Virus record (IMG/VR): IMGVR_UViG_3300003322_000571
Span: 62,001 to 126,000 of that record
Strand: one strand, 5' to 3'
DNA: 64,000 bases
In this document: piece after piece, positions 1 through 27,195 of the stretch
Layout: each line of letters starts with the position of its first letter
Numbering within the stretch: the stretch's first letter is position 1
Program-made: the position numbers and the translations under genes
The notes under the pieces: generated by a model
Seen by the model: only the letters and a program-made list of their open reading frames with translations
Told to the model about the DNA's origin: nothing
Database searches by the model: none

Positions 1-183
1 TGTAGAGCAGATGCGAAGAACTTCACGCTTGAACAGCGATCGTCCGTATTTCCTGACGCTAGCTCTGATACGATTACCCGAACCTAAATAGTCATCTGTG
101 CTCGCATTCTCCCCTGAATGTACGCCAATGTAAAATTGGTTTGTGTCAATGTTGACGGTCTTGTAAACAATGTGCTCTCTCAT
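1..183 (-). CDS. Seg-like GIY-YIG homing endonuclease, N-terminal part (truncated by window edge; absent from the ORF track)
   Basis: Reverse strand reads GGAGG-N6-ATG then MREHIVYKTVNIDTNQFYIGVHSGENASTDDYLGSGNRIRASVRKYGRSLFKREVL, matching the Seg family pattern (VY..N....YIG.H....D.Y.GSG...KYG...FKRE.L). ATAAATA lies upstream (201-207). Confidence 0.88.
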   Translation of the reverse strand, partial: MREHIVYKTVNIDTNQFYIGVHSGENASTDDYLGSGNRIRASVRKYGRSLFKREVLRICST

Positions 184-292
184 GATACCCCTCCAACGCT
201 TATTTATGGACTTGCATTGCGATTGGTCCAGACTTCCCTGAGAAGATCGATCCGATCACTCGTCAACTCAAGTTGTACAACTAAGTACACCT

Positions 293-390
293 GCCAGCGT
301 TTCTAATATTGGCCTTAGGGGTGCCCTTATAAAGCACTAAGACCCGTCTAGATCAGGCGGTTAATGTGGGTTCGATTCCCATCGCTGGTA
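293..390 (+). tRNA. tRNA with anticodon UAU (Ile/AUA by anticodon) and a long variable arm
   Basis: Acceptor GCCAGCG/CGCTGGT with discriminator A390; D-arm TCTAA/TTAGG; anticodon arm GTGCC-CTTATAA-AGCAC; variable stem CCGTCT/AGGCGG; T-arm GTGGG-TTCGATT-CCCAT. CCA is not encoded. Confidence 0.88.
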
Positions 391-434
391 CACACAACCC
401 TAATATTTCTGTTGGGGTAACGTACTCAACCATA

Positions 435-440
435 TATACT
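435..440 (+). promoter_or_regulatory. sigma70-type -10 element (TATACT) for the small-RNA transcript starting at ~447
   Basis: TATACT ends 6 nt before the first paired base of the Y-like RNA; no clear -35. Confidence 0.5.
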
Positions 441-446
441 TTCTTC

Positions 447-515
447 AGCTGTTGCGTAGTTCAAGGGTTACTTCTTTTGGTGAAACTATCCCCTTGACGT
501 TTTAATCTCAGCTTT
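447..515 (+). ncRNA. candidate minimal Y RNA (Ro60 ligand)
   Basis: Terminal stem AGCTG(447-451)/CAGCT(509-513) with a U tail; helix GT[T]CAAGGG(459-467)/CCCTTGAC(491-498) with a single bulged pyrimidine, as in the GU[C]CGAG/CUUGAC Ro60 site of animal Y RNAs; 1.1 kb upstream of a Ro60 gene. Confidence 0.65.
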
Positions 516-526
516 AACATATGTAC

Positions 527-588
527 GCACGTGGGTGCAAGGTTAACTGTTCCCGTCTCATGACCGGACGTTAGTCTCCACGCTGCCA
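527..588 (+). ncRNA. tRNA-like remnant or mimic with a CAU-type loop, ending in CCA, with no T-arm
   Basis: GCACGTGG/CCACG[C]TGC closing stem, GGTTAA D-loop-like segment, CTCATGA (557-563), CCA at 586-588, followed by a terminator. Confidence 0.4.
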
Positions 589-599
589 ACTTTTGGTTG

Positions 600-640
600 A
601 AGCCCTGGTATGCAACACTGCTACCAGGGCTTTTCCTTTT
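600..640 (+). terminator. intrinsic terminator of the RNA cluster
   Basis: AAGCCCTGGTA...TACCAGGGCTT followed by TTCCTTTT. Confidence 0.8.
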
Positions 641-652
641 TGGAGAAAATAA

Positions 653-1057
653 ATGTCGCTAGGTACAATTAAAGATGTCGTAATTGCTACGGTGGATGTC
701 GCTAATCTCAACAATCGCGTTTACCCAAAGAACGTGATTGAAGAAGCTGTTCGTCAGCGTGTTCATCCGATTTTCGGCCGAGTCGGTATGCCGGAAGCAG
801 GATCGTCTTGTGAGGTCGACCTTCGTGATGTATCACATCAAGTTACCGATCTCCGAATCACCGAAGATGGTAACTTGACTGGCACAGTTGTCGTCCTTGA
901 CACGCCTCCCGGTAGGTTGCTGACATCATTGTTGACAGAGAACCTCGACATCACCTTCCGCATGGCAGGATATGGTGATCTAATTGATAAGGATGGATAC
1001 ACAGAAGTGACCAACTTTCGTCTATCATCGATCAATGCTGTCGCAGACGGTGCTTGA
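653..1057 (+). CDS. T4 gp21-like prohead protease paralog, catalytic residues lost
   Basis: NLNNRVYP, GRVGMP (cf. GELNHP), VSH, LDTPPG, TFRMAGYG (cf. GVSSRGLG), SINAV (cf. GVDAV). Confidence 0.8.
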   Translation: MSLGTIKDVVIATVDVANLNNRVYPKNVIEEAVRQRVHPIFGRVGMPEAGSSCEVDLRDVSHQVTDLRITEDGNLTGTVVVLDTPPGRLLTSLLTENLDITFRMAGYGDLIDKDGYTEVTNFRLSSINAVADGA

Positions 1058-1075
1058 TCTCATTAAGGGTCAACC

Positions 1076-1375
1076 ATGAAACTCCTCGAAGAACTTGAAG
1101 CACAGTTTACTGATGGTCGTCAACTGTCTTCTGAACTGTTTGGTTACATCTTGCGTTGGTATCAAACAGGTGAGATCGACAAAGTTGATGAGCTGCTGAA
1201 GTCGATCGAGTTCAAGCCCACGATGCTGCATGTTGCTGCTGGCGTGATCCGTATCACAGCAGGCTGGCGACACCTTCTTCCGTCTTGGGAAGAAGCAAAG
1301 GATCGGGCGGTGTTGGCGATCACGGAAAGTGGTCATGATCCTCACAAGCTGTTAATGGGAGTTCGTCCGTTATGA
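1076..1375 (+). CDS. hypothetical protein
   Basis: SD present; stop overlaps the next start. Confidence 0.7.
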   Translation: MKLLEELEAQFTDGRQLSSELFGYILRWYQTGEIDKVDELLKSIEFKPTMLHVAAGVIRITAGWRHLLPSWEEAKDRAVLAITESGHDPHKLLMGVRPL

Positions 1376-1560
1376 AACGTGACATCAAAGATCATCCGTT
1401 ATTGAAAACGATGACGGCTGAGCAACTGTTGCAAATGCTCGTTGATGTTCGAGAAGTTGCATGGGTCGAAGGCCAAGATGGACGAACGAAAGAAGATTTT
1501 TACAACGCTTTAACGCAAATTTGTCGCATCACACGTGATGTTGACAACTACCATTTTTAA
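1372..1560 (+). CDS. hypothetical protein
   Basis: ATGA coupling with the previous ORF. Confidence 0.65.
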   Translation: MKRDIKDHPLLKTMTAEQLLQMLVDVREVAWVEGQDGRTKEDFYNALTQICRITRDVDNYHF

Positions 1561-1573
1561 CTGGAGAAACGAT

Positions 1574-3250
1574 ATGTCAAAACTCAATCCAACTGGTCGT
1601 AACGTTACGACAAACATTGTTGCGGTTGCTGCGAACCGTGGTGAACAGCTTGCTGTTTCTGCGAATGGCAACTTGCAATTCAAGAAGGACTCCTACCAGA
1701 CGTTGTACGAAACAACTGTTTCGACGATGCTTGGCAAGGGCAACCAACTGAATTCTGCTGATGCGCTTGTGCAAAAGCTGAAGGCGTCCGTTCGTTCTGT
1801 TGTTGCTGATGGCGCCAGCTCATTCGACTTCATTGCGAACCTCGCAATCCACGCACGTACGGAGATGAACGTCCGTACGATCCCAATCGTTCTTGTGGTT
1901 GAATTTGCGAAGGCGCTCGCCGATCAGCGTCAACCGTTGGTTGCACGTGTTGATGCGATTGAACAAGAACTGACTACAGCTCGTAAGGCTAAGCGTGCGA
2001 CTTCGTCAATCGTTGAGCGCCTGACTGCAGCTCGCGAAGACGCTGAAATCTACACGTATGGCAACATGCGTCAGCTCGTCAATGACGTGATTCAGCGTGC
2101 CGACCAGATCACTGATCTGTACGCATATGCACTGCAAGTGTTCGGTGGCAAGAACAAGATCCCGATGGCGATCAAGCGTGGTGTTGCTGATGCTTTCAAC
2201 AAGTTCAGCGAATACGCGTTCGCGAAGTACAACCGTGACGGTGCTGTCAAGTTCCGTGACGTCCTTCGTATCGTTCACCCAACTGCTTCGACGATCAAGC
2301 AAGGCGAAATCTTTGACAAGATCATGAAGGATACGCTTTCCGTCCCGTACACTTGGGAAACTGAGTTGTCGGCCAACGGTCAGAAGCCAGTTGCAGAACG
2401 TCTGACGCAGAAGCAGCTGTGGACGCAGCTCGTCACGTCTGGTAAGGTCGGTTACATGGCGTTGCTCCGCAACCTGCGTAACATCATCAGTGCTGGTCTT
2501 GATGACGATGTTGTCAAGAAGCATGTTCTCGATGTGATCTCCGATCCTGCACGCGTTGCAAAGAGCAAGCAATTGCCGTATGACTTCATTGAAGCATACA
2601 ACATCGTCAAGCCACTTGACGGTCGTTTCGCAACCGCAGTGTCGAAGGCACTTGATGCTAGTGCTGCGAACTTGCCAGAACTTGGTAAGCGCGTGTGGCT
2701 GATTGTTGACTACTCCGGCTCGATGGGTCATGGTCCGACTTCTGCATTCGGCGGTGGTGTGTTCCTCGCTTCGGCATTGCTGAAGGCTGCAGGTTCGACT
2801 GCTTCTCGTCTTGCTGTGACGTTGTTCGGTTCGACTGCATTGACGTTGAAAGACGTTGATACGAACCATTCGATGCTCGGTCTCCAGCAGATCCTCGAAA
2901 GCTACCGTAAGGATGGCATCAGCGGTTCGACGAATTTCCGTGCAGCTCTTGACCAGAAGTCTCAGCTCGGTTTCGAACCTGACACGATCATTGTGATCAC
3001 TGACGGTGAAGTCAATGGCTTCCCGTACGGCGTGATCAAGAACGTTGCAGGTCGTAGCGTGATGAAGATGGCAGTCAACATGTCTGTTGCAACATCGACT
3101 CCGATGTCGCAGCATGACGGCTGGTATTCAATGGCAGGCTGGTCTCCAGCTATGTTCAAGTGGATCCCGGCAATGCGTGACGCCGGTTCTGTAATCGAAC
3201 AGCTTGCTGTTCCTTACAAGGGTGTCCCTTCAGCTAAGGTTGAAGAATAA
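1574..3250 (+). CDS. rsr: Ro60/Rsr-like TROVE + vWA RNA-binding protein
   Basis: TROVE features (IQRADQIT, KRGVADAFNKFSEYAFAKY, RDVLRIVHP, TWETELS, GYMALLRNLRN, SKQLPY) plus vWA MIDAS (DYSGSM, GSTNF, ITDGE). Start set at the ATG after GGAGA. Confidence 0.93.
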   Translation: MSKLNPTGRNVTTNIVAVAANRGEQLAVSANGNLQFKKDSYQTLYETTVSTMLGKGNQLNSADALVQKLKASVRSVVADGASSFDFIANLAIHARTEMNVRTIPIVLVVEFAKALADQRQPLVARVDAIEQELTTARKAKRATSSIVERLTAAREDAEIYTYGNMRQLVNDVIQRADQITDLYAYALQVFGGKNKIPMAIKRGVADAFNKFSEYAFAKYNRDGAVKFRDVLRIVHPTASTIKQGEIFDKIMKDTLSVPYTWETELSANGQKPVAERLTQKQLWTQLVTSGKVGYMALLRNLRNIISAGLDDDVVKKHVLDVISDPARVAKSKQLPYDFIEAYNIVKPLDGRFATAVSKALDASAANLPELGKRVWLIVDYSGSMGHGPTSAFGGGVFLASALLKAAGSTASRLAVTLFGSTALTLKDVDTNHSMLGLQQILESYRKDGISGSTNFRAALDQKSQLGFEPDTIIVITDGEVNGFPYGVIKNVAGRSVMKMAVNMSVATSTPMSQHDGWYSMAGWSPAMFKWIPAMRDAGSVIEQLAVPYKGVPSAKVEE

Positions 3251-3282
3251 CACTCGTTGAAGGTCAACGACCAACGCAAGAT

Positions 3283-3310
3283 AATAGCCCCGAAAGGGGC
3301 TATTCCTTTT
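3283..3310 (+). terminator. intrinsic terminator after Ro60
   Basis: AATAGCCCC-GAAA-GGGGCTATT-CCTTTT. Confidence 0.8.
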
Positions 3311-3322
3311 GGAGAATACAAA

Positions 3323-3748
3323 ATGGACAACAGAATTTTCAATGTCAACGGACGTGGCCTATCGATGTTGACGTCAACGCTTAAGCTAGCGTTTTGGCAA
3401 AATGCAGGATGCTATGACAAGAGTCAAGACACTGAAACAGTCAAGGGATACACCGTCGAAAAAGACAAAGGCTTGATTTTGCTCTGGGCTGTTGACGAAA
3501 AAGATCCATCACATCAAAAATTCATCGCACCGTTGACAGCTGAAGCCGTCGCACCGCTCGTTGATTTGTGGCTGAAGTCAGACGAAGCGAAACAAATCCC
3601 GTTTGAGCGATGGGAGGATGATTGCGATCATGACGGACACAACACTCTCGGTTGGCGTGTATATTGTGAAGATTGGGGCCATGTAGGAAGGGCAGGATGG
3701 CATGCAACAATTGCAATCAAGCCTGTTTATCTGTGGCACGGCAAATAA
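3323..3748 (+). CDS. hypothetical protein
   Basis: GGAGA SD before ATG 3323; Trp/Gly-rich C-terminus. Confidence 0.75.
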   Translation: MDNRIFNVNGRGLSMLTSTLKLAFWQNAGCYDKSQDTETVKGYTVEKDKGLILLWAVDEKDPSHQKFIAPLTAEAVAPLVDLWLKSDEAKQIPFERWEDDCDHDGHNTLGWRVYCEDWGHVGRAGWHATIAIKPVYLWHGK

Positions 3749-3813
3749 GGGGATAGGTAACTCCTCAACTATTACCTGTAAGTAACGATAACCATAACTA
3801 AAAAGGGTCACTT

Positions 3814-5136
3814 ATGTCAAGTCATGTATTGACGCTCTTCAACCCGATTGTTAGAGCGATTAAAAAGGGATACGTTCAGTATCAGAATCGAAAAGAAGAT
3901 AAAGCGTGGAACACTCTCCGTGCGGAAGAACTTGCAAAACTCGATAGTAAATCTCATAATTGGTACACCGTATTGGTCGATAATCAACTGAAGACAGTTC
4001 GTGGCCAAAAGGAATTGAACGCGAACCGCCAACAAAAGGTTGATGCATCGTACTTCGAATTCTTGTTCAAACTGGGATGCAAGGTTGCACGAGAGTATGC
4101 TGTACTACCAAACATCATCGGCATGCAGCCGTTGCATAGTCCTGTTGGTTTGGTGTATCACATGGAGTACACACAAAAACCAGTCACTTCAGAGCAAAAT
4201 GATGTTGGAAGTGCCGATATCGGTAAGTATCGCCTTGAAGTGATCAGTCATGCTGTCGTTGCATTGACTGAAAGGTTGAGCACCCACGTTGATCCTAACG
4301 TAGCTACTGTCCTGGGACAGAAGGATAAGACACTAGTTGACAAGTTAGTTGACGTTCTCGGGGGAGAAATCGCTCGTGAAATGCTGATTGACATTCTTAA
4401 CGATTTGAGACATCTCGGTCGTCAGAACAGAAATCACTTTGAAGTCATCACCGCATCTGACAGTCATAAAGCAGTATATCTCAACAAAATCTGCAATGAG
4501 ATTGCTGCAGAAACACGACGAGGCCCTGCGAATTGGATTATCGCATCGATTTCAACGGTTTCGAAATTGCAAAGTGCGCCGTTCTCATACTTTAGCTCTG
4601 GTAAGTCCAACCGTGATAGCAGTTTGCTGTTAATGCACGTTGGTCGGCTTAATGGAGTAATTGAAGTTTACGCTTCAACAGAGGTCAAAGACGATGAGAT
4701 TTTGATTGGCTACATGGGCGGTAACGGCGCCACAGATACAGGTTACGTATTTGCTCCATATATTCCTGTTGTTCCAGGTAATGTTGTACTTGATCCTGTA
4801 ACACTTGAGCCGATGGTTGAATTCATGACTCGCTACGGTAAAACCGCATTTAAGAATCTGTCGGACGATTTTGGCAACCTTGTAATCCCACGTCATTCTA
4901 CAGGTGAAAAATACTACCGCATTGTTGAATTCGCAGAACCTAAAGAAGGCGTATACGATCCAACCGCGCTCGTTGAAGATTTTGTGTTCCCTGCGACTAA
5001 AGAACCTCAGTTTCTTGCACCTCTAACAGAGCAATTGCTTGGTAAATCGAACCTTAATATCGAAGAAGACTCGTCTGTTGAGTTGAAAACAAACCTTCCA
5101 GATAGTACTGAGGTGAACGATAAACCGTTCGTATAA
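3814..5136 (+). CDS. divergent T4 gp23/gp24-family capsid protein paralog
   Basis: IIGMQPLHSPVGLVY, TRRGPANWIIAS, GRLNGVIEVY, LIGYMG...DTGYVFAPYIP, DPVTLEP...FMTRYG. Confidence 0.85.
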   Translation: MSSHVLTLFNPIVRAIKKGYVQYQNRKEDKAWNTLRAEELAKLDSKSHNWYTVLVDNQLKTVRGQKELNANRQQKVDASYFEFLFKLGCKVAREYAVLPNIIGMQPLHSPVGLVYHMEYTQKPVTSEQNDVGSADIGKYRLEVISHAVVALTERLSTHVDPNVATVLGQKDKTLVDKLVDVLGGEIAREMLIDILNDLRHLGRQNRNHFEVITASDSHKAVYLNKICNEIAAETRRGPANWIIASISTVSKLQSAPFSYFSSGKSNRDSSLLLMHVGRLNGVIEVYASTEVKDDEILIGYMGGNGATDTGYVFAPYIPVVPGNVVLDPVTLEPMVEFMTRYGKTAFKNLSDDFGNLVIPRHSTGEKYYRIVEFAEPKEGVYDPTALVEDFVFPATKEPQFLAPLTEQLLGKSNLNIEEDSSVELKTNLPDSTEVNDKPFV

Positions 5137-5154
5137 CAATAAGGAATAAAAACC

Positions 5155-5325
5155 ATGTCCAATCAAGTTACTTTCCCAAAGGGCAAGCAAGTCAATCGCA
5201 GTGGTGAACGCACTCGTTTGACGCGTCAAACGACCGTCACTGTTATCCGTAGCGAACCAGCTCGTGACGGCAAGACTCGCGTGTTCTGGAAGTCGCATCG
5301 CGGCGAAGCTAACGCACTCGTCTAA
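5155..5325 (+). CDS. small basic protein, 56 aa (not in track)
   Basis: AAGGA SD, MSNQVTFPKGKQVNRSG...; terminator follows. Confidence 0.7.
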   Translation: MSNQVTFPKGKQVNRSGERTRLTRQTTVTVIRSEPARDGKTRVFWKSHRGEANALV

Positions 5326-5346
5326 TCACAATAGACATTGATCATC

Positions 5347-5372
5347 AACACCGCCCTCGTGGCGGTGTTTTT
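5347..5372 (+). terminator. intrinsic terminator
   Basis: AACACCGCC-CTCGT-GGCGGTGTT-TTT. Confidence 0.8.
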
Positions 5373-5406
5373 GTTCCTGTTTGTTTTCCCCTGCAACTAT
5401 AAGATA

Positions 5407-5681
5407 GTCCGTGAAATACCGGGCGCAATTATGGCTTTGGGAGGTTAGCGTTCGTGCTAATATACCATTCGTTAGGCGGCTTGCAGCGCATAGAACGATA
5501 AACGGCGGAGGGATCCAGGCGTCAATGCCTCCCTTGACTGAAGCAAAACTGATTGACTAACCTTTGATAAAGGCGGCGGGGTACGGCTCTGCTAGTGACC
5601 GGCTGGCCTAACTTCGTGTTGCATAACTACGCTGGGAATCCCGGCTATACCTCCATCGTTTGCATGAGATAACCGGTGGAC
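5407..5681 (+). ncRNA. candidate ~275-nt structured RNA of unknown family
   Basis: No credible ORF in the gap; nested helices 5407-5422/5673-5681, 5423-5433/5622-5632, 5471-5477/5606-5612; possible pseudoknots 5521-5526/5552-5557 and 5440-5449/5644-5654; -10-like TATAAGAT at 5398-5405. Confidence 0.5.
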
Positions 5682-5696
5682 ATTTAAGGAGAGATT

Positions 5697-6257
5697 ATGA
5701 AAGAGATTGAGCGAAAATTCTTGGTTAACTCTGCTCAGTTCAACAGAGACATCAGTGTGCTCGAGAACTACGGAGTGGACATTGTCAAGTATTCGATCAT
5801 GCAAGGTTACTTGTCGACGGGTATTGATATGCCGATTCGCATCCGGCATCGATCGCATTTTGATCCAGTTGCCGTTGCAACGGTCGATGCTTACACGATG
5901 ACTGTTAAGGCTAATCGTACTGGTATCACGTGCGATGAGATCGAGTTCGATATCCCTGGTGATAAGTTTAATCAGCTGTTTAGGCTTTGTGGTGATAACG
6001 TTCTGGTAAAGTCGCGTTATGTCGTACCTTATCGAGGCAGTATTTGGGAAGTTGACATGTTTCATGGGGACTTACAAGGCCTTGTTGTTGCGGAGATTGA
6101 ATTGCAACATGAGGATGATCTTTTCGTACATCCTGTGTGGGTTGATACTCAAGTAACTGCCGACTCGCGGTATGCTAATGCGAACCTCGTGAAGCAGACG
6201 TTTGACATCCTAAGTAACGAATTGGTATGGAAGAATGTTGAACGATTTAGGGTTTAA
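5697..6257 (+). CDS. CYTH-domain (triphosphate tunnel) protein
   Basis: EIERKFLV, IMQGYL, RIR, KSRY, WEVDMFHG..GLVVAEIEL. Confidence 0.9.
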   Translation: MKEIERKFLVNSAQFNRDISVLENYGVDIVKYSIMQGYLSTGIDMPIRIRHRSHFDPVAVATVDAYTMTVKANRTGITCDEIEFDIPGDKFNQLFRLCGDNVLVKSRYVVPYRGSIWEVDMFHGDLQGLVVAEIELQHEDDLFVHPVWVDTQVTADSRYANANLVKQTFDILSNELVWKNVERFRV

Positions 6258-6274
6258 AGGTTAAAGTCACCAAC

Positions 6275-6472
6275 ATGAGCAAACCACACTATCACAAAGA
6301 CGAACGCGGCATTCTGCAAAAGTGCTATCACGGTGCACAGAATTTGCTGACCGATTACAAGTTTTGGATCGGCGTCACATTGAGTTTCCCTCTCGAACAT
6401 TTCATCTGGGAGAAGCTGTGGCCTTTCTATCTGATCTCCGAATGGCTCGGTCTAATTGACCATCTCCACTGA
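6275..6472 (+). CDS. small membrane protein
   Basis: Hydrophobic FWIGVTLSFPLEHFIWEKLWPF segment. Confidence 0.65.
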   Translation: MSKPHYHKDERGILQKCYHGAQNLLTDYKFWIGVTLSFPLEHFIWEKLWPFYLISEWLGLIDHLH

Positions 6473-6645
6473 TGGACGAGTTTAATCCGTACGATCCTGA
6501 GCTTGCGCAACAGATCACAGAACATGCACAGAGATTACTAGATGGTCTTTTGAAGAGTTCCCATCTGCAAAGTAACTCTCCTGTCCAACAGTGGTTCGAA
6601 GCCAATCCACAACTACCTTTCAATGATTTCTGGAATCCAAAATGA
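6472..6645 (+). CDS. hypothetical 57-aa protein (not in track)
   Basis: MDEFNPYDPELAQQI...; translationally coupled at both ends. Confidence 0.55.
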   Translation: MDEFNPYDPELAQQITEHAQRLLDGLLKSSHLQSNSPVQQWFEANPQLPFNDFWNPK

Positions 6646-7790
6646 GCAAATTTGCTGTTGAAGTCGTCCGTATCCGCGCAATCGAACCGATCACCGGAGC
6701 TGACGCAATTGAACTCGCTGTTGTTGGTGGCTACCGTTCTGTCGTTAAGAAGGGTGACTACAAAGTCGGCGATCTCGCCGTGTACATTCCTGAACAAGCA
6801 ATCGTCCCTGATTGGTTGCTCGAAAGGATGAATCTCACTGGTCGTCTTGCTGGGACGAATAAGAACCGCGTAAAAGCAATCAAGCTTCGCGGTTGTCTGT
6901 CACAAGGTTTGCTGATTCCCGTCAAGCATGTTGCAGCTTCCGGTGCGAACTACATTCAGAATGATGTAAGTCTGATTCCTGTTAAGGAAGGCGATGACGT
7001 TGCTGATTTCCTTGGTATCGTTAAGCATGAAGTGCCGATCCCCGCACACCTTGCTGGTGAAGTGTACAACGCAGGTAGCCACTTGACTGTTCCGTACGAT
7101 ATCGAGAACTACAAGAAGTTCGTCGATGTGTTTGAAGATGGTGAAGAAGTCGTGTTCACCGAAAAACTGCATGGCACATTCACCGGTATCGGTATTCTGC
7201 CGCGTGGTGATTGGGAGGAAAAGCACTTCCTCAGCCGTTTCGTTATCTTCAGCAAGGGACTTGGTGCACGAGGTCTGTGCTTCAAGGATTGCGATAACAA
7301 CGCAGACAATCTGTACGTTCGCACGCTGATGGAGTCCGACATCTTCTCTCGTCTGTCTGACCTGATGGAGGAGATGGAAGAAGAGCACGGCTTTGATCGT
7401 CCTTTGTTCCTGCTCGGAGAAACGTTCGGTGCAGGTGTACAAGACTTGCAGTACGGTAACCTGCCGGCTTCGTTCCGCCTGTTTGACGTATGCGTTGGCT
7501 ACCGCGGTGATCAGTTCTTCTTCGACTACGAAGGTCGTGTCCGCCTCGCGAACCATCTTGAAATTCCGATGGTTCCGATTCTGTACAAGGGTCCGTTCAG
7601 CCAAGCGGTGCTCGATCAGTACACGAATGGCAAGGAAACGGTTTCTGGTAAGGAATCACACATCCGCGAAGGTGTTGTGATCACTCCTGTCGTTGAACGT
7701 GAACATCCTGAACTCGGCCGTGTGATCTTGAAGTCTGTCTCTGCAGACTACCTGCTTCGCAAGAATGAAAACGCAACGGAGTACAACTGA
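6642..7790 (+). CDS. RNA ligase, DRB0094/Rnl5 family
   Basis: N-terminal IEPITGADAIE module; motif I TEKLHGT, GETFG, FDV, EGVV, LKSVSADYL. Confidence 0.92.
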   Translation: MSKFAVEVVRIRAIEPITGADAIELAVVGGYRSVVKKGDYKVGDLAVYIPEQAIVPDWLLERMNLTGRLAGTNKNRVKAIKLRGCLSQGLLIPVKHVAASGANYIQNDVSLIPVKEGDDVADFLGIVKHEVPIPAHLAGEVYNAGSHLTVPYDIENYKKFVDVFEDGEEVVFTEKLHGTFTGIGILPRGDWEEKHFLSRFVIFSKGLGARGLCFKDCDNNADNLYVRTLMESDIFSRLSDLMEEMEEEHGFDRPLFLLGETFGAGVQDLQYGNLPASFRLFDVCVGYRGDQFFFDYEGRVRLANHLEIPMVPILYKGPFSQAVLDQYTNGKETVSGKESHIREGVVITPVVEREHPELGRVILKSVSADYLLRKNENATEYN

Positions 7791-7969
7791 TGAATAACGT
7801 CTTAGTAGGGTACGAGGGAAGTGCTGAAGTTGACATCAGCTACTTCTATTGCCCGTACATCCCAGGACAACCTATTCCTGTTGATGTGTGGGATCACCGT
7901 GCTGTTAAGAGGCCAACTGATATCCAGCGCCGGATCATGGAAGCGGTTCAACGTCCTCAACTGTATTGA
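7790..7969 (+). CDS. 59-aa protein carrying a gp23 major-capsid motif (not in track)
   Basis: MNNVLVGYEGSAEVDISYFYCPYIP...; start overlaps the ligase stop (TGATG). Confidence 0.7.
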   Translation: MNNVLVGYEGSAEVDISYFYCPYIPGQPIPVDVWDHRAVKRPTDIQRRIMEAVQRPQLY

Positions 7970-8035
7970 ACCCTAAAGTTGAATAAAACTTTCAGGTCAA
8001 ATACAGTTCACCAACTTTCAACATAGAGGTCATTT

Positions 8036-9133
8036 ATGAACCGTCTTCCTTTTGGTCAGCAACAGACCACAACGGCACAACCAGTTGACATGAGTGCGTT
8101 CATTCAAGTGAACCCGACTCCTGCTCAGCCGGTCGTCGTTCATCAACCGCAGACGCGTGCACTGACTGTGATCAGTGATAAAGACATCCAGAACTTCGGG
8201 ACGGCGTCGACGAATCGGATCTCTGCAACGTCGCAGAAGATTCTCGCTGGTACGAAGGCCTCTGCAGTCGATGACTTTGGCGACAAGCTGAATGAGCTCG
8301 TTGCTACGACAAAGAAGCTCGATCCTGCGGATATCGGCAAGCCTAGTCTGATCAAGAAGCTGTTCGGGATCGGCTCCAGCGTCAAGGATCAATTCCAAGC
8401 GCAGTATCAAACCGTTGAACAGCGGATGAATACGCTGATCGCGGAGATTGATTCGATGGCGAAGCTGATGGAGCAACGAATCGATGATCTCGAGACGATG
8501 TACAAGGAAAATGAGGATGCGTACAAGCAACTCAGCCAAGACATCGCTCAGATCAACAGTATCGTCGCGACGATGAAGGCTGATCTTGCAGCACAACCAA
8601 CGCCGACTGATCCGATCGAAGCGCAGCGTCTCAATGACTATCAGGAACTGATCGACCGGCTCGAAAAGCGTGCTGATGATCTCGAACGTGGAAAGCAGCT
8701 CGTCATCCTGTCGCTGCCGGAAATTCGGATTGAGCAGACGAACAAGCGCAATCTCGTTGCAAGTATCGCAACGCTGAAGAGCACGACGATTCCGGCTTAC
8801 CAAGGTCTGTTCTCGCGTTACATCCTGGCGATGGAAACGAAGAAGGGCAACCAGGTCGTCGCTGCTTTGCAGGATGCAACTGATGAAGCGTTCCGCAAGC
8901 AAGCTGACCTCGTTCGTCAGAATGCGGTTGACTCTGCGAAGGCTCAACAACGGTCTGTCGTGACGACGGAGACGCTGATTCACTGCCGTGATCAGATGCT
9001 TGCAACTCTCGACGACGTCAAGAAGATCAATGACGCTGGCCGTAAGGCACGTCAAGACGCTCGTCCGCAACTCGAACAACTGGAACAGTCGCTGATCGCA
9101 CGCGCTGCTCCGCAACAACTTTCTCACAACTGA
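8036..9133 (+). CDS. telA: toxic anion resistance protein (TelA/KlaB family)
   Basis: Coiled-coil protein with IQNFG, LIKKLFG, QYQTV, RLEKRADDL, LPEIRIEQ..N..L...I, TIP. Confidence 0.85.
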   Translation: MNRLPFGQQQTTTAQPVDMSAFIQVNPTPAQPVVVHQPQTRALTVISDKDIQNFGTASTNRISATSQKILAGTKASAVDDFGDKLNELVATTKKLDPADIGKPSLIKKLFGIGSSVKDQFQAQYQTVEQRMNTLIAEIDSMAKLMEQRIDDLETMYKENEDAYKQLSQDIAQINSIVATMKADLAAQPTPTDPIEAQRLNDYQELIDRLEKRADDLERGKQLVILSLPEIRIEQTNKRNLVASIATLKSTTIPAYQGLFSRYILAMETKKGNQVVAALQDATDEAFRKQADLVRQNAVDSAKAQQRSVVTTETLIHCRDQMLATLDDVKKINDAGRKARQDARPQLEQLEQSLIARAAPQQLSHN

Positions 9134-9149: not shown

Positions 9150-9887
9150 ATGGCTGGTATCAATCTGCAAAAACGCGCCGAAGCTGTCGGCATCGTCCTG
9201 GCAAAGCGTGGCATCACGAAGGTGCCCCCGGTTCGTGTCGGCATGGCACTGGACGTTTCTGGCTCTGCACAAACGTTCTATACGAGCGGCGTGATGCAAG
9301 AAACGATCGACCGTCTGCTCGGCGTTGCGCTGAAGTTCGACGACAACGGTGAACTCGACTCGTGGCTGTTCCACAACGACGTTCTCCCTCAACTGCCGAC
9401 GCTGACGGAAAGCGATGAAGGTACGTACGTCAAGAACGTCGTCCTCAAGCAACGCGGTCTGTGGGGTGGTACGTCGTACGCTCCTCCGCTGAAGGCTGCG
9501 ATGAGCTACTACTTCCAAGGTCCTGCTCCCGCCCCTGCTGCGAAGTCGGGTGGTCTGTTCGGCCTGTTCAAGAAGGAAGCTGCGCCCGCACCGGCTCCCG
9601 CTACCAAGCAAGACCCGGCAATGCTGCTGTTCGTCACCGACGGTGCGAACGGTGACCGCGCTGAAGCTGCTCAAGTGCTCCGCGAAGCTGCGAAGAGCTC
9701 GCCGGTGTACTTCCAAATGGTCGGTATCGGCCGTGCATCCGAGTTCGACTTCATCCGTCAAATGGCTGACGAGCTGCCGAACGTCGGGTTCGTCAACCTC
9801 AGCACGCTCAGCATGACCGATGAACAGCTGTACGAACAGCTGATCAATCCGGAATTCTGTGAGTGGATCAAGACGCTCAAGGCGTAA
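9150..9887 (+). CDS. vWA domain protein, TerF-C-terminus type
   Basis: ALDVSGS, FDDNGELDSWLF, GGTSYAP, FVTDG, YFQMVGIG. Confidence 0.88.
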   Translation: MAGINLQKRAEAVGIVLAKRGITKVPPVRVGMALDVSGSAQTFYTSGVMQETIDRLLGVALKFDDNGELDSWLFHNDVLPQLPTLTESDEGTYVKNVVLKQRGLWGGTSYAPPLKAAMSYYFQGPAPAPAAKSGGLFGLFKKEAAPAPAPATKQDPAMLLFVTDGANGDRAEAAQVLREAAKSSPVYFQMVGIGRASEFDFIRQMADELPNVGFVNLSTLSMTDEQLYEQLINPEFCEWIKTLKA

Positions 9888-26006: not shown

Positions 26007-26462
26007 ATGGCACAACCGAAATTCATTACCAATCCGTCGTATGACGCACTGCATAATGCAGCTGTCACAATGGTTCGTGAAGCTCGGACACTCGCATGGA
26101 TCGACGCCATTGTCGCTCCCGTGCGAGGTGGACTGATGTTCGGTGTCATCGCGTCACACAAGTTGAACGTTCCTGTCATCCCAATTCACTACTCTTCCAA
26201 GGGCGGTAATGGCGACGACAAGAATCACACAAACACAATCGTAGCACTCGCTAACGGCGTTAAGACGATCTTGCTCGTTGACGACATCATCGACAGCGGT
26301 AACACGCTGAAAGAAATTCATGATGCGTACACAGCTGCAGGGATCAAGGTGATCTCCGCTGCATTCCACTACAAAGAGAATGCAGTGTTTCATCCTGATC
26401 TGTACTTCTGGCGCATCCCAGCTGATAGTCCGTTCATTACGTATCCGTATGAGAATGCGTAA
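26007..26462 (+). CDS. purine phosphoribosyltransferase (Gpt/Hpt-like)
   Basis: PVRGG, LLVDDIIDSGNT, ITYPYE. Confidence 0.88.
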   Translation: MAQPKFITNPSYDALHNAAVTMVREARTLAWIDAIVAPVRGGLMFGVIASHKLNVPVIPIHYSSKGGNGDDKNHTNTIVALANGVKTILLVDDIIDSGNTLKEIHDAYTAAGIKVISAAFHYKENAVFHPDLYFWRIPADSPFITYPYENA

Positions 26463-27195
26463 TTTTTGACCAACGATATCCAAAAGCGATGTCGTTATTC
26501 ACTGCAGCTCGTGAGATATAGGATACACCCGTATTCATTTCACGAGCTGCAGCAGAAATGCTGTCGAACACCTTGATGATATTTCCATTGAGATCAGATT
26601 GAATAACTTGATGTTTTAGAAGTTTGGATCTGGGTACTCTATTGTCGGGAGCAGCAAACTTCCACACGTAGCCTTTAGTGGAAGCGTACAGTCCCTGGCA
26701 ACAGTACAGAATATAAGATCCATTAATCCCTGTAGCTTTCGCTGCAACTCTGGATGATGGATAACGTGCTAGTTCCTGTCCTTCCAGGTTATACTGGATC
26801 ACTTCTGTACCTCCATGGGAAGCATTACTTCGTCGTGTGCCTTGTAAGGAAGCACTGATACGAGATCGAGTATTTTGTGATAAAACTCGACCGGAACCAG
26901 CACCTTCACCACCGTTTTGTAGGTTGGTGAGTATTCCTGTTCCATTATCTCGTCGTCCATACTGTTCAATCAGTTGACGTTCAAGGATATATGCAGACTC
27001 TTCATCGGCGCATTGAACGTGTTCAATAATGATGTCTTGACCAGCGGATCTAATTTGATTGATGACAGCATCTTTATATGGATTCTGTCCATTCGTGCTT
27101 GGATTGAAATGAACCCTCGAACGTCTGCCCTTGCCTTTTCCAATGTAAAAAGGTAAATTGGTGGACGGATCGATTAATTTATACACATAGAACAT
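26437..27195 (-). mobile_element. free-standing GIY-YIG homing endonuclease with NUMOD repeats
   Basis: FYVYKLIDP...FYIGKG...R, GILTN, NUMOD3/NUMOD1-like segments; inverted orientation; own TATAAATA promoter; flanked by a recoded duplicate of the PRTase 3' end. Confidence 0.88.

What the first reader, a model, noticed from the sequence alone, without database searches (positions are those of the whole stretch)
653..1057. Prohead protease (gp21) paralog with all three catalytic residues substituted
Seen: gp21 motifs are retained, but His (GELNHP to GRVGMP), Ser (GVSSRG to TFRMAG) and Asp (GVDAV to SINAV) are all replaced. The ORF is intact with a strong SD, no ATAAATA late promoter and no neighbouring morphogenesis genes. 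Established: phage prohead protease has been identified as a trigger of type I CBASS. Inference: an early-expressed pseudo-protease acting as a decoy or inhibitor for a protease-sensing defence, or a regulator of the real protease.
Basis: partly seen in the sequence, partly recalled or inferred. Interest (0 to 1): 0.68.

Follow-up and report, generated by a model that had tools for sequence, protein, structure and literature searches.

The report
Conserved dead copy of prohead protease
A 350-kb soil/root jumbo phage carries, besides its normal capsid-maturation protease, a short copy with all three catalytic residues replaced; this copy belongs to a large, conserved, unannotated phage protein family whose function is unknown but testable (possibly shielding the phage from defences that sense the real protease).

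Summary
Window 653-1057(+) encodes a 134-aa protein with the T4 gp21 (Peptidase S77) fold: phrog_207 E 4e-17; AlphaFold pLDDT 95; Foldseek to 5JBL TM 0.83, rmsd 1.8 A. The triad is replaced: His->Met46, Ser->Arg103, Asp->Asn128. Both terminal extensions of real proteases are missing.

It is not a decaying copy. In my sample of 315 relatives it groups with 176 short proteins (median 131 aa) that separate from 139 full-length His-Ser-Asp proteases on one branch (SH-aLRT 99). Arg occupies the Ser column in 89% of them. dN/dS is 0.15-0.28. The family is acidic (median pI 4.8).

The same genome has a canonical 212-aa protease in its head module about 180 kb away, and a second degenerate paralog 2.3 kb upstream of this gene.

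A trimmed gp23-family capsid paralog lies at 3814-5136, and the same arrangement recurs in a distant relative.

In relatives the gene sits among recombination, nucleotide-metabolism or RNA-repair genes. This suggests, without proving, non-late expression.

Function is inferred only: a non-catalytic binding protein acting outside the prohead. The anti-defence shield reading fits a 2026 CBASS report but is untested. Truncated protease paralogs were already reported in phiKZ-like phages (2017).

The parts
653..1057 (+). ORF for the 134-aa short gp21-like pseudo-protease ('mini-gp21', P0001). Former triad positions are Met46, Arg103 and Asn128. It lacks the roughly 26-residue N-terminal and roughly 55-residue C-terminal extensions of the genome's own protease.
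642..645 (+). Shine-Dalgarno GGAG, 7 nt before the ATG.
   Evidence: read directly from the sequence
601..641 (+). Terminator-like hairpin: 10-bp G+C-rich stem (601-610 with 622-631), inner pairs in the loop, then a T-rich run to 641. It ends 11 nt before the ATG, so the gene is read either by read-through or from a promoter upstream of the hairpin.
   Evidence: sequence; fold of 285-648. The simple scan missed it because the loop is longer than 8 nt.
3814..5136 (+). Context, not shown to be a partner: 440-aa Gp23-family capsid paralog ('mini-gp23') that lacks the roughly 120-residue insertion of the genome's own major capsid protein. The same order (short gp21-like gene, Ro/TROVE, one small gene, Gp23-like) is found in contig L077.
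1535..3250 (+). Context: Ro60-like TROVE + vWA protein, the conserved downstream neighbour both here and in L077.

Best explanation
Shown: the gene encodes a stand-alone core of the gp21 prohead-protease fold. It cannot work as a gp21-type serine protease because His, Ser and Asp are all replaced. It is kept by selection as one member of a large, old family in jumbo phages that also carry a normal protease.

Inferred, step 1: the protein lacks the terminal extensions of real proteases. In T4 the N-terminal region blocks the active site until it is self-cleaved. In SPN3US the C-terminal region is thought to target the enzyme into the prohead. Without them, this protein probably stays in the cytoplasm and is not part of the prohead core.

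Inferred, step 2: the former active-site pocket is not left to drift. It is rebuilt into a new conserved form (Gly45-Met46, Phe102-Arg103, Asn128). At the same time the Asn-x-Asn-x-Arg-x-Tyr loop, the Ser61-His62 pair and the Thr84/Gly87 turn are kept in common with real proteases. I therefore propose that it works by binding, not cutting.

Inferred, step 3: my leading guess for the ligand is a peptide segment that the real protease would otherwise recognise (Ile/Leu-x-Glu-type sites). The near-invariant Arg at the nucleophile position could hold an acidic side chain or a carboxylate. Binding without cleavage would shield such segments. These could be host 'tripwire' loops, such as CBASS CD-NTase activation loops, or the phage's own head proteins before assembly.

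The confidence below is for this binding-shield mechanism. That the protein is a functional, non-catalytic family member I hold at about 0.9.
For: - Fold and homology.
- Triad replaced.
- Family-wide pattern, from 315 aligned relatives (the best 150, the best 120, and IMG/VR loci): the 176 without the triad have a median length of 131 aa. They carry Arg at the Ser column in 157, Met at the His column in 112 (the rest mostly hydrophobic) and Asn at the Asp column in 108. All 139 sequences with His-Ser-Asp are at least 173 aa (median 217).
- One branch (SH-aLRT 99, a single change) separates the short non-catalytic group from the real proteases.
- dN/dS is 0.15-0.28 between close relatives.
- Column analysis shows a remodelled pocket alongside retained shared motifs.
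- The family is acidic, median pI 4.8, against 6.0 for full-length proteases.
- A canonical protease is present in the same genome and in relatives.
- Neighbours are non-structural in three independent contexts: UvsX-UvsY-UvsW, a dCMP-deaminase-like gene, and PTH2/Ro/RNA ligase.
- Literature: T4 gp21 cuts after Glu in I/LxE, and CBASS CD-NTases are switched on by that cut (PMC12991175). The gp21 N-terminus blocks the active site and the enzyme is pentameric (PMC9958956). The C-terminus is inferred to target the enzyme to the prohead (PMC5694885).
Against: - There are no binding, expression or virion data of any kind.
- Residues invariant in real proteases next to the triad (Glu72, Leu73, Arg130 in the own-protease numbering) are lost in the short family. 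The substrate groove may therefore no longer read the same motif.
- I had no model coordinates, so I could not check that Met46, Arg103 and Asn128 still face one pocket, or where the shared conserved residues lie.
- The host and its defences are unknown (root metagenome).
- The nearby capsid paralog, conserved in L077, points equally well to a morphogenetic role.
- No gene neighbour is shared across all lineages, so context cannot name a partner.
Confidence: 0.3

Rival explanations
1. Head-assembly factor or regulator. The dead protease binds the real protease (mixed pentamers, dominant-negative timing control), or binds capsid or vertex proteins. In this phage the partner would be the neighbouring trimmed gp23 paralog. 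It would then act in morphogenesis rather than against the host.
For: - T4 gp21 is a pentamer thought to sit under the vertices, and it is activated when the gp23 paralog gp24 binds (PMC9958956).
- A gp23-family paralog lies 2.7 kb downstream, and the same gene order is kept in L077 at only 36-43% protein identity.
- Motifs shared with real proteases are retained.
Against: - Most family members are not near any capsid gene.
- G001 and G003 carry a short paralog but only one Gp23-family match each, although both are incomplete records.
- The gene is never in the head module.
- It lacks the extensions thought to take the protease into the prohead.
- The complex prediction with the real protease gave no verdict, which is not evidence either way.
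Confidence: 0.25
2. The fold has been reused for an unrelated job in nucleic-acid or nucleotide metabolism, for example as an accessory subunit of recombination or RNA-repair machinery. The protease ancestry would then be irrelevant to its present function.
For: - Neighbours are UvsW/UvsY/UvsX/gp32, a dCMP-deaminase-like gene, or PTH2/Ro-TROVE/RNA ligase.
- In four contigs its stop abuts or overlaps the start of a phrog_11279 gene.
Against: - The protein is acidic (pI 4.7; family median 4.8), which is unfavourable for direct nucleic-acid binding.
- The neighbours differ between lineages, so no single pathway is implied.
- These regions are simply where non-structural genes of these phages lie.
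Confidence: 0.15
3. It is still an enzyme, with a new catalytic mechanism built from the remodelled pocket or from the conserved Ser61-His62 pair.
For: Ser61 and His62 are conserved in 93% and 95% of short members, and Arg103 in 89%.
Against: - The same Ser-His pair is just as conserved in real proteases that have the full triad (92% and 99%), so it is inherited and not a new site. T4 gp21 lacks it.
- Adjacent residues rarely form a working dyad.
- There is no nucleophile at the old position.
Confidence: 0.07
4. It is a decaying duplicate or a mis-called ORF with no function.
For: The Pfam score is just under the curated cut-off (26.3 against 27). Homing endonucleases flank the locus, so it could be duplication debris.
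Against: - The frame is intact and has an SD.
- 132 representative clusters match at E <= 1e-10, nearly all 115-150 aa.
- dN/dS is 0.15-0.28.
- There are ten invariant columns across 41 members.
- The fold prediction is confident.
Confidence: 0.02

Closest known systems
T4 gp21 prohead core protease (MEROPS/Pfam Peptidase S77; structure 5JBL)
   Same: Same fold (TMq 0.83, rmsd 1.8 A over 137 columns). Detectable sequence homology. Shared Asn-x-Asn-x-Arg-x-Tyr-Pro loop and other core motifs.
   Different: No His-Ser-Asp triad. 134 aa instead of about 212: the N-terminal region that blocks and then frees the active site is missing, and so is the C-terminal tail. It is not in the portal-protease-scaffold-capsid module. 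The genome has its own canonical enzyme elsewhere.
Truncated 'cryptic protease' paralogs of phiKZ-like giant phages (SPN3US gp117, 201phi2-1 gp206 of 145 aa, PhiPA3 gp143 of 136 aa; Front Microbiol 2017, PMC5694885)
   Same: Same phenomenon: a short, C-terminally truncated paralog of about 135-145 aa that is presumed inactive and coexists with the full-length prohead protease in a giant phage. Its function is unknown.
   Different: A different lineage: those derive from S80-type proteases. A profile of the present family finds nothing in SPN3US or 201phi2-1. gp117 keeps the aligned Ser and Asp and lacks only the His, whereas here all three are replaced and the replacements are themselves conserved.
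Weak short paralogs in cultured relatives: Xanthomonas phage XacN1 ORF386 (140 aa, 'predicted ORF') and counterparts in Stenotrophomonas phage RAS14 and Xanthomonas phage Xoo-sp13
   Same: Short open frames of 135-147 aa that match the family profile weakly (E about 1e-5 to 1e-6) in genomes that also have a full protease. They resemble this genome's second paralog.
   Different: Only about 23% identical to the protein studied. They lack the Met/Arg/Asn signature. They are unannotated and I found no data on them in the XacN1 paper.
Pseudoenzyme decoys and phage anti-CBASS proteins (Acb1, Acb2, Acb4)
   Same: Only the proposed logic: a phage protein that prevents activation or signalling of a defence triggered late in infection.
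   Different: Acb proteins degrade or sponge the nucleotide signal. Nothing here shows any link to CBASS. No homology was tested or claimed.

Membership tests
Peptidase S77 (T4 gp21 prohead protease) | Sequence and fold homology to gp21 | tested here: met
   PF03420 scores 26.3 bits, just under the 27-bit cut-off. phrog_207 E 4e-17. Foldseek to 5JBL: E 5e-8, TMq 0.83.
Peptidase S77 (T4 gp21 prohead protease) | Catalytic triad His-Ser-Asp | tested here: not met
   Met46, Arg103 and Asn128 occupy the aligned columns. The triad identity for T4 gp21 is taken from PMC5694885 and from the 5JBL alignment.
Peptidase S77 (T4 gp21 prohead protease) | Full-length architecture of about 200-230 aa with N- and C-terminal extensions | tested here: not met
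   134 aa, covering profile positions 50-172 of 198. All triad-bearing relatives in the sample are at least 173 aa, median 217.
Peptidase S77 (T4 gp21 prohead protease) | Gene located in the head module (portal, protease, scaffold, capsid) | tested here: not met
   The canonical module is at genome 241-246 kb. This gene is at 62.65 kb, among RNA-repair genes.
Peptidase S77 (T4 gp21 prohead protease) | Proteolytic activity on head proteins | not testable with these tools
   Needs biochemistry.
Short non-catalytic gp21-like family (defined here) | Length 115-150 aa, Arg at the Ser column, hydrophobic (mostly Met) at the His column, and placement on the short side of the branch that separates it from real proteases | tested here: met
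   The nearest member is 51% identical.
Short non-catalytic gp21-like family (defined here) | Coexists with a canonical protease in the same genome | tested here: met
   This genome; G001 and G003; XacN1, RAS14 and Xoo-sp13 for the weak type.
phiKZ-like 'cryptic protease' paralogs (SPN3US gp117 family) | Sequence relationship to gp117 and its homologs | tested here: not met
   The family profile A3 finds no match in SPN3US or 201phi2-1 at E <= 10. A deeper profile-profile comparison was not possible.
phiKZ-like 'cryptic protease' paralogs (SPN3US gp117 family) | Short truncated paralog beside a full-length protease in a giant phage | tested here: met
Anti-defence decoy or shield against protease-sensing immunity (e.g. 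CBASS) | Made before or together with the real protease | tested here: inconclusive
   Non-structural neighbours and no ATAAATA upstream. However, the motif is not diagnostic in this genome and no RNA runs exist.
Anti-defence decoy or shield against protease-sensing immunity (e.g. CBASS) | Binds the sensor or its bait loop and lowers defence | not testable with these tools
   The host is unknown. Needs genetics and biochemistry.

The most novel reading that the evidence does not exclude
The short gp21-like proteins are a widespread, so far unrecognised class of phage counter-defence proteins. They would be catalytically dead protease cores that occupy the bait loops or sensors through which bacterial immunity (CBASS CD-NTases and perhaps other systems) detects prohead-protease activity. 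In this phage lineage the neighbouring trimmed gp23 paralog might play the matching role for capsid-sensing defences.
Probability: 0.15. Interest if true: 0.85.

Novelty: new variant of a known kind. Interest (0 to 1): 0.58.

Why it matters
Prohead proteases have just been reported as the activity that switches on a large share of CBASS systems. A conserved, catalytically dead, cytoplasmic copy of that protease is an obvious candidate for a counter-measure or a timing regulator.

The family is large (over a hundred 50%-identity clusters) and is carried by jumbo phages of soil and water, but it is annotated only as 'hypothetical'. Its conserved Arg at the nucleophile position gives a sharp mutational handle.

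Whatever its role turns out to be, it shows that head genes of T4-core jumbo phages have spawned trimmed paralogs (mini-gp21 and mini-gp23) that live outside the head module.

Tried and rejected
- Megablast of window 1-8000 against GenBank phages: no match.
- ARAGORN: no tRNA in the whole window, although Rfam's tRNA model scores 293-390.
- The word-based protein search with the single sequence found only two relatives. The exhaustive HMMER search was needed to see the family.
- Complex prediction, own protease plus this protein: score 0.00, no verdict. Not used as evidence for or against binding.
- Family profile against SPN3US and 201phi2-1: nothing. Same-family membership with the phiKZ-type cryptic proteases is therefore not supported at sequence level.
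- PA5oct and RsoM2USA have only the real protease, so PA5oct's RNA-seq and virion data could not be used.
- The XacN1 paper text holds nothing on ORF386 or the protease.
- Sequencing runs: only DNA runs (root and soil metagenomes), no RNA. Read laying was therefore not used, and no read-tool refusals occurred.
- Rfam on L077 8000-13000: no RNA family, so the tRNA-like element is not visibly conserved there.
- Test of whether the two small downstream ORFs (1076-1375, 1372-1560) are split-off C-terminal pieces of a protease: no meaningful similarity.
- Alternative Ser61-His62 catalytic pair: rejected as a new site because real proteases conserve it equally.
- Tail-gene idea: the 511-aa and 163-aa genes that flank the family member in relatives are UvsW helicase and phrog_11279, not sheath and tube.
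- No alternative genetic code was used.
It was rerun reading the same sequence from the locus file.

Full report
**What is there**

The window is bases 62,001-126,000 of a 350,089-bp IMG/VR virus record with direct terminal repeats and 48% G+C. The only near-complete DNA holder is a root metagenome. Its nearest cultured relatives are the T4-core jumbo phages XacN1, RAS14/CM1, Xoo-sp13, RsoM2USA and PA5oct.

The ORF at 653-1057(+) is intact and encodes 134 aa. An in-frame TAA directly precedes the ATG, and GGAG lies 7 nt upstream. A strong hairpin with a T-run (601-641) ends 11 nt before the start codon.

**Is it a prohead-protease homolog?**

Yes.
- Pfam Peptidase_S77 scores 26.3 bits, just under the curated 27.
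- phrog_207 'head maturation protease' gives E 4.2e-17.
- tblastn finds about 32% identity to annotated proteases of T4-like phages.
- An AlphaFold2 model built on 41 family members has mean pLDDT 95.2.
- Foldseek places it on T4 gp21 (5JBL) with E 5e-8, TM 0.83 by the query and rmsd 1.8 A. Herpesvirus proteases follow far behind.

**Are the catalytic residues gone?**

Yes. The genome has a canonical 212-aa protease at about 243.6-244.3 kb. It lies between the portal gene and the scaffold and major capsid genes, and carries GELDHP, GVSSRG and TYDIV. Aligned to it, the short protein has Met46 for His, Arg103 for Ser and Asn128 for Asp. T4 gp21 has a His-Ser-Asp triad according to PMC5694885. 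The 5JBL construct carries Ala at the His and Ser positions.

The short protein also lacks about 26 N-terminal and 55 C-terminal residues of the real enzyme. The two small ORFs downstream are not the missing C-terminus.

**It is a family, not an accident**

An exhaustive HMMER search of 1.84 billion representatives gave 1,450 hits. Of these, 132 had E <= 1e-10, and nearly all of those are 115-150 aa.

I aligned 315 distinct sequences: the best 150, the best 120, and IMG/VR loci. They split cleanly:

| Group | Number | Median length | Triad columns |
|---|---|---|---|
| With His-Ser-Asp | 139 | 217 aa (minimum 173) | His, Ser, Asp |
| Without the triad | 176 | 131 aa | Arg at Ser in 157; Met at His in 112 (others mostly Phe/Val/Tyr/Leu/Ile); Asn at Asp in 108 (Asp kept in 25) |

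- A maximum-likelihood tree of 113 rows puts all short non-catalytic sequences on one side of a single branch (SH-aLRT 99, one change).
- Close relatives give dN/dS of 0.15-0.28.
- Column analysis shows three classes of position:
  - Kept in both groups: Asp15, Asn18, Asn20, Arg22, Tyr24, Gly42, Ser61, His62, Leu82, Thr84, Gly87, Gly106, Gly108.
  - Conserved only in real proteases: Glu72, Leu73, His75, Pro76, Gly126, Ser128, Arg130, Asp150.
  - Switched or newly conserved in the short family: Phe102, Arg103, Gly45, Pro17, Leu90.
- The former active site has therefore been rebuilt and then held, not left to drift.
- The Ser61-His62 pair is not a new catalytic site, because real proteases conserve it equally.
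- The family is acidic: median pI 4.8 against 6.0 for full-length proteases.
- All members come from metagenomes and are unnamed. Atlas clusters are all viral 'hypothetical protein'.

**Surroundings**

The gene order here, from upstream of the window to its first 10 kb, is as follows:
1. ADP-ribosylglycohydrolase.
2. A 64-aa ORF.
3. A second degenerate gp21-like paralog (142 aa, genome 59,954-60,382, outside the window).
4. A GIY-YIG endonuclease.
5. PTH2.
6. A second GIY-YIG endonuclease, on the minus strand.
7. A tRNA-like element (293-390).
8. The hairpin (601-641).
9. The short gp21-like gene studied here.
10. Two small ORFs.
11. Ro/TROVE+vWA (1535-3250).
12. A 163-aa ORF.
13. A Gp23-family paralog (3814-5136; PF07068 E 9e-36).
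14. CYTH.
15. RNA ligase.
16. A small gp23-like frame (about 7790-7939).
17. TelA.
18. vWA-TerF-like.

The gp23 paralog is 39% identical to the core of the genome's own capsid protein but lacks its residues of about 95-217.

The same order (ADP-ribosylglycohydrolase, PTH2, short gp21-like gene, TROVE, one small gene, Gp23-like, RNA ligase, small Gp23-like, TelA, TerF-like) recurs in ENA contig L077. There the orthologs are only 43% and 36% identical.

In other lineages the family member sits elsewhere:
- Between UvsW helicase and a phrog_11279 gene, downstream of gp32, UvsX and UvsY. This holds for six contigs.
- After a dCMP-deaminase-like gene.

It is never in a head module. Several members have homing endonucleases beside them.

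Genomes with a short member also have a canonical protease.

**Timing**

Nothing direct is available. TATAAATA is not enriched in the genome. ATAAATA occurs upstream of the scaffold gene and of the first gene after the portal, but not upstream of this gene. No RNA run holds the sequence. The non-structural neighbourhoods suggest non-late expression. This is an inference.

**Mechanism**

Shown: the protease fold, no triad, no extensions, selection, a family-specific pocket, and coexistence with a real protease.

From the literature:
- T4 gp21 is a pentamer whose N-terminal region blocks the active site until self-cleavage (PMC9958956).
- The C-terminal region of such proteases is inferred to target them into the prohead (PMC5694885).
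- gp21 cuts after Glu in I/LxE motifs, and this activity cleaves an exposed loop of CBASS CD-NTases and switches them on (PMC12991175).

Inferred: the short protein stays in the cytoplasm and acts by binding. I rank the readings as follows.

| Reading | Confidence |
|---|---|
| Shield that binds protease-recognition segments without cutting, of host sensors or of phage head proteins | 0.3 |
| Head-assembly or protease regulator, perhaps with the gp23 paralog | 0.25 |
| Fold reused in nucleic-acid metabolism | 0.15 |
| New enzyme | 0.07 |
| Junk | 0.02 |

The loss of Glu72, Leu73 and Arg130, all invariant in real enzymes, is a caution against assuming the same peptide specificity. The one complex prediction (own protease plus this protein) gave no verdict.

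**Comparison with what is known**

Truncated, presumably inactive paralogs of the prohead protease were reported in 2017 in phiKZ-like giant phages: SPN3US gp117, 201phi2-1 gp206 and PhiPA3 gp143, of 136-145 aa. Their function is unknown. The present family is the same kind of thing in the S77 lineage of T4-core jumbo phages.

A profile of the present family finds nothing in SPN3US or 201phi2-1. Unlike gp117, it has lost all three triad residues and fixed new ones.

Cultured relatives XacN1 (ORF386), RAS14 and Xoo-sp13 hold only weak short paralogs that resemble this genome's second copy. BFVD shows further short gp21-fold proteins, for example in Yersinia phage fHe-Yen9-04. A broad jumbo-phage genomics review does not mention such paralogs.

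**Verdict**

- The pseudo-protease label is right.
- The decoy idea is reasonable and newly topical but untested.
- Novelty: a new variant of a known kind.
- Interest is moderate to fairly high, because the family is large, conserved and unannotated, and it makes a current question in phage-defence biology directly testable.

Noticed in passing
G000:C1:59954-60382 (+), i.e. L003:1495-1923, 2.3 kb upstream of the gene and outside the window: A second degenerate gp21-like paralog of 142 aa (PF03420 18.5 bits). It has Glu at the His column, and the Ser and Asp regions are not recognisable. It falls on the same side of the tree as the short family and has an ortholog in IMG/VR locus L056, next to PTH2 and RNA-ligase homologs.
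   Followed up: partly
window 3814-5136 (+): A 440-aa Gp23-family paralog ('mini-gp23'). It is 39% identical to the core of the genome's own major capsid protein, lacks that protein's residues of about 95-217, and has a different C-terminal tail of about 85 aa. It is conserved (36% identity) in L077 in the same gene order. No other gp24-like gene was found in the genome.
   Followed up: partly
window about 7790-7939 (+): A small open frame (66 aa) directly after the RNA ligase gene matches Gp23 profile positions 300-341 (26.5 bits). L077 has a 97-aa gene with a weak Gp23 hit at the same place, so it looks like a conserved small gene rather than debris.
   Followed up: no
window 293-390 (+), with the structured stretch up to the hairpin at 601-641: A tRNA-like element: Rfam tRNA 32.4 bits (gathering score 29), not called by ARAGORN, with a long variable arm and a 9-nt 'anticodon' loop. 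It lies about 1.1 kb upstream of a Ro/TROVE+vWA gene. Region 285-648 folds better than shuffles (z -3.4). Bacterial Ro proteins pair with tRNA-like Y RNAs (PMC4201824), so this may be a Y-RNA-like partner. No counterpart was detected in L077.
   Followed up: partly
L003:303-1307 and L003:2683-3099; window 1535-3250, 5697-6257, 6642-7790, 8036-9133, 9150-9887: A cluster of RNA-repair and stress genes: ADP-ribosylglycohydrolase, PTH2 peptidyl-tRNA hydrolase, Ro/TROVE+vWA, CYTH, RNA ligase (PF09414 with the PHA02142 OB-fold domain), TelA and vWA-TerF-like. The whole block is syntenic with L077.
   Followed up: partly
window 1-183 (-) continuing upstream; L003:1991-2713 (+); window 26437-27195 (-): GIY-YIG homing endonuclease genes flank the two gp21-like paralogs. 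Endonucleases also sit beside family members in L004, L013 and L074. This may explain why the gene occupies different genomic positions in different lineages.
   Followed up: no
L010, L011, L012, L013, L018, L004: In six metagenomic contigs the family member lies between UvsW helicase and a phrog_11279 gene of 163-181 aa. In four of them (L010, L011, L012, L018) its stop abuts or overlaps the next start. In this genome the UvsW and phrog_11279 homologs are adjacent (208.8-211.0 kb) without it.
   Followed up: partly
whole genome G000: The T4 late-promoter octamer TATAAATA is not enriched (4 sites on each strand against about 7 expected). ATAAATA occurs upstream of only some head genes, so T4-style promoter spotting is unreliable in this phage.
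   Followed up: partly
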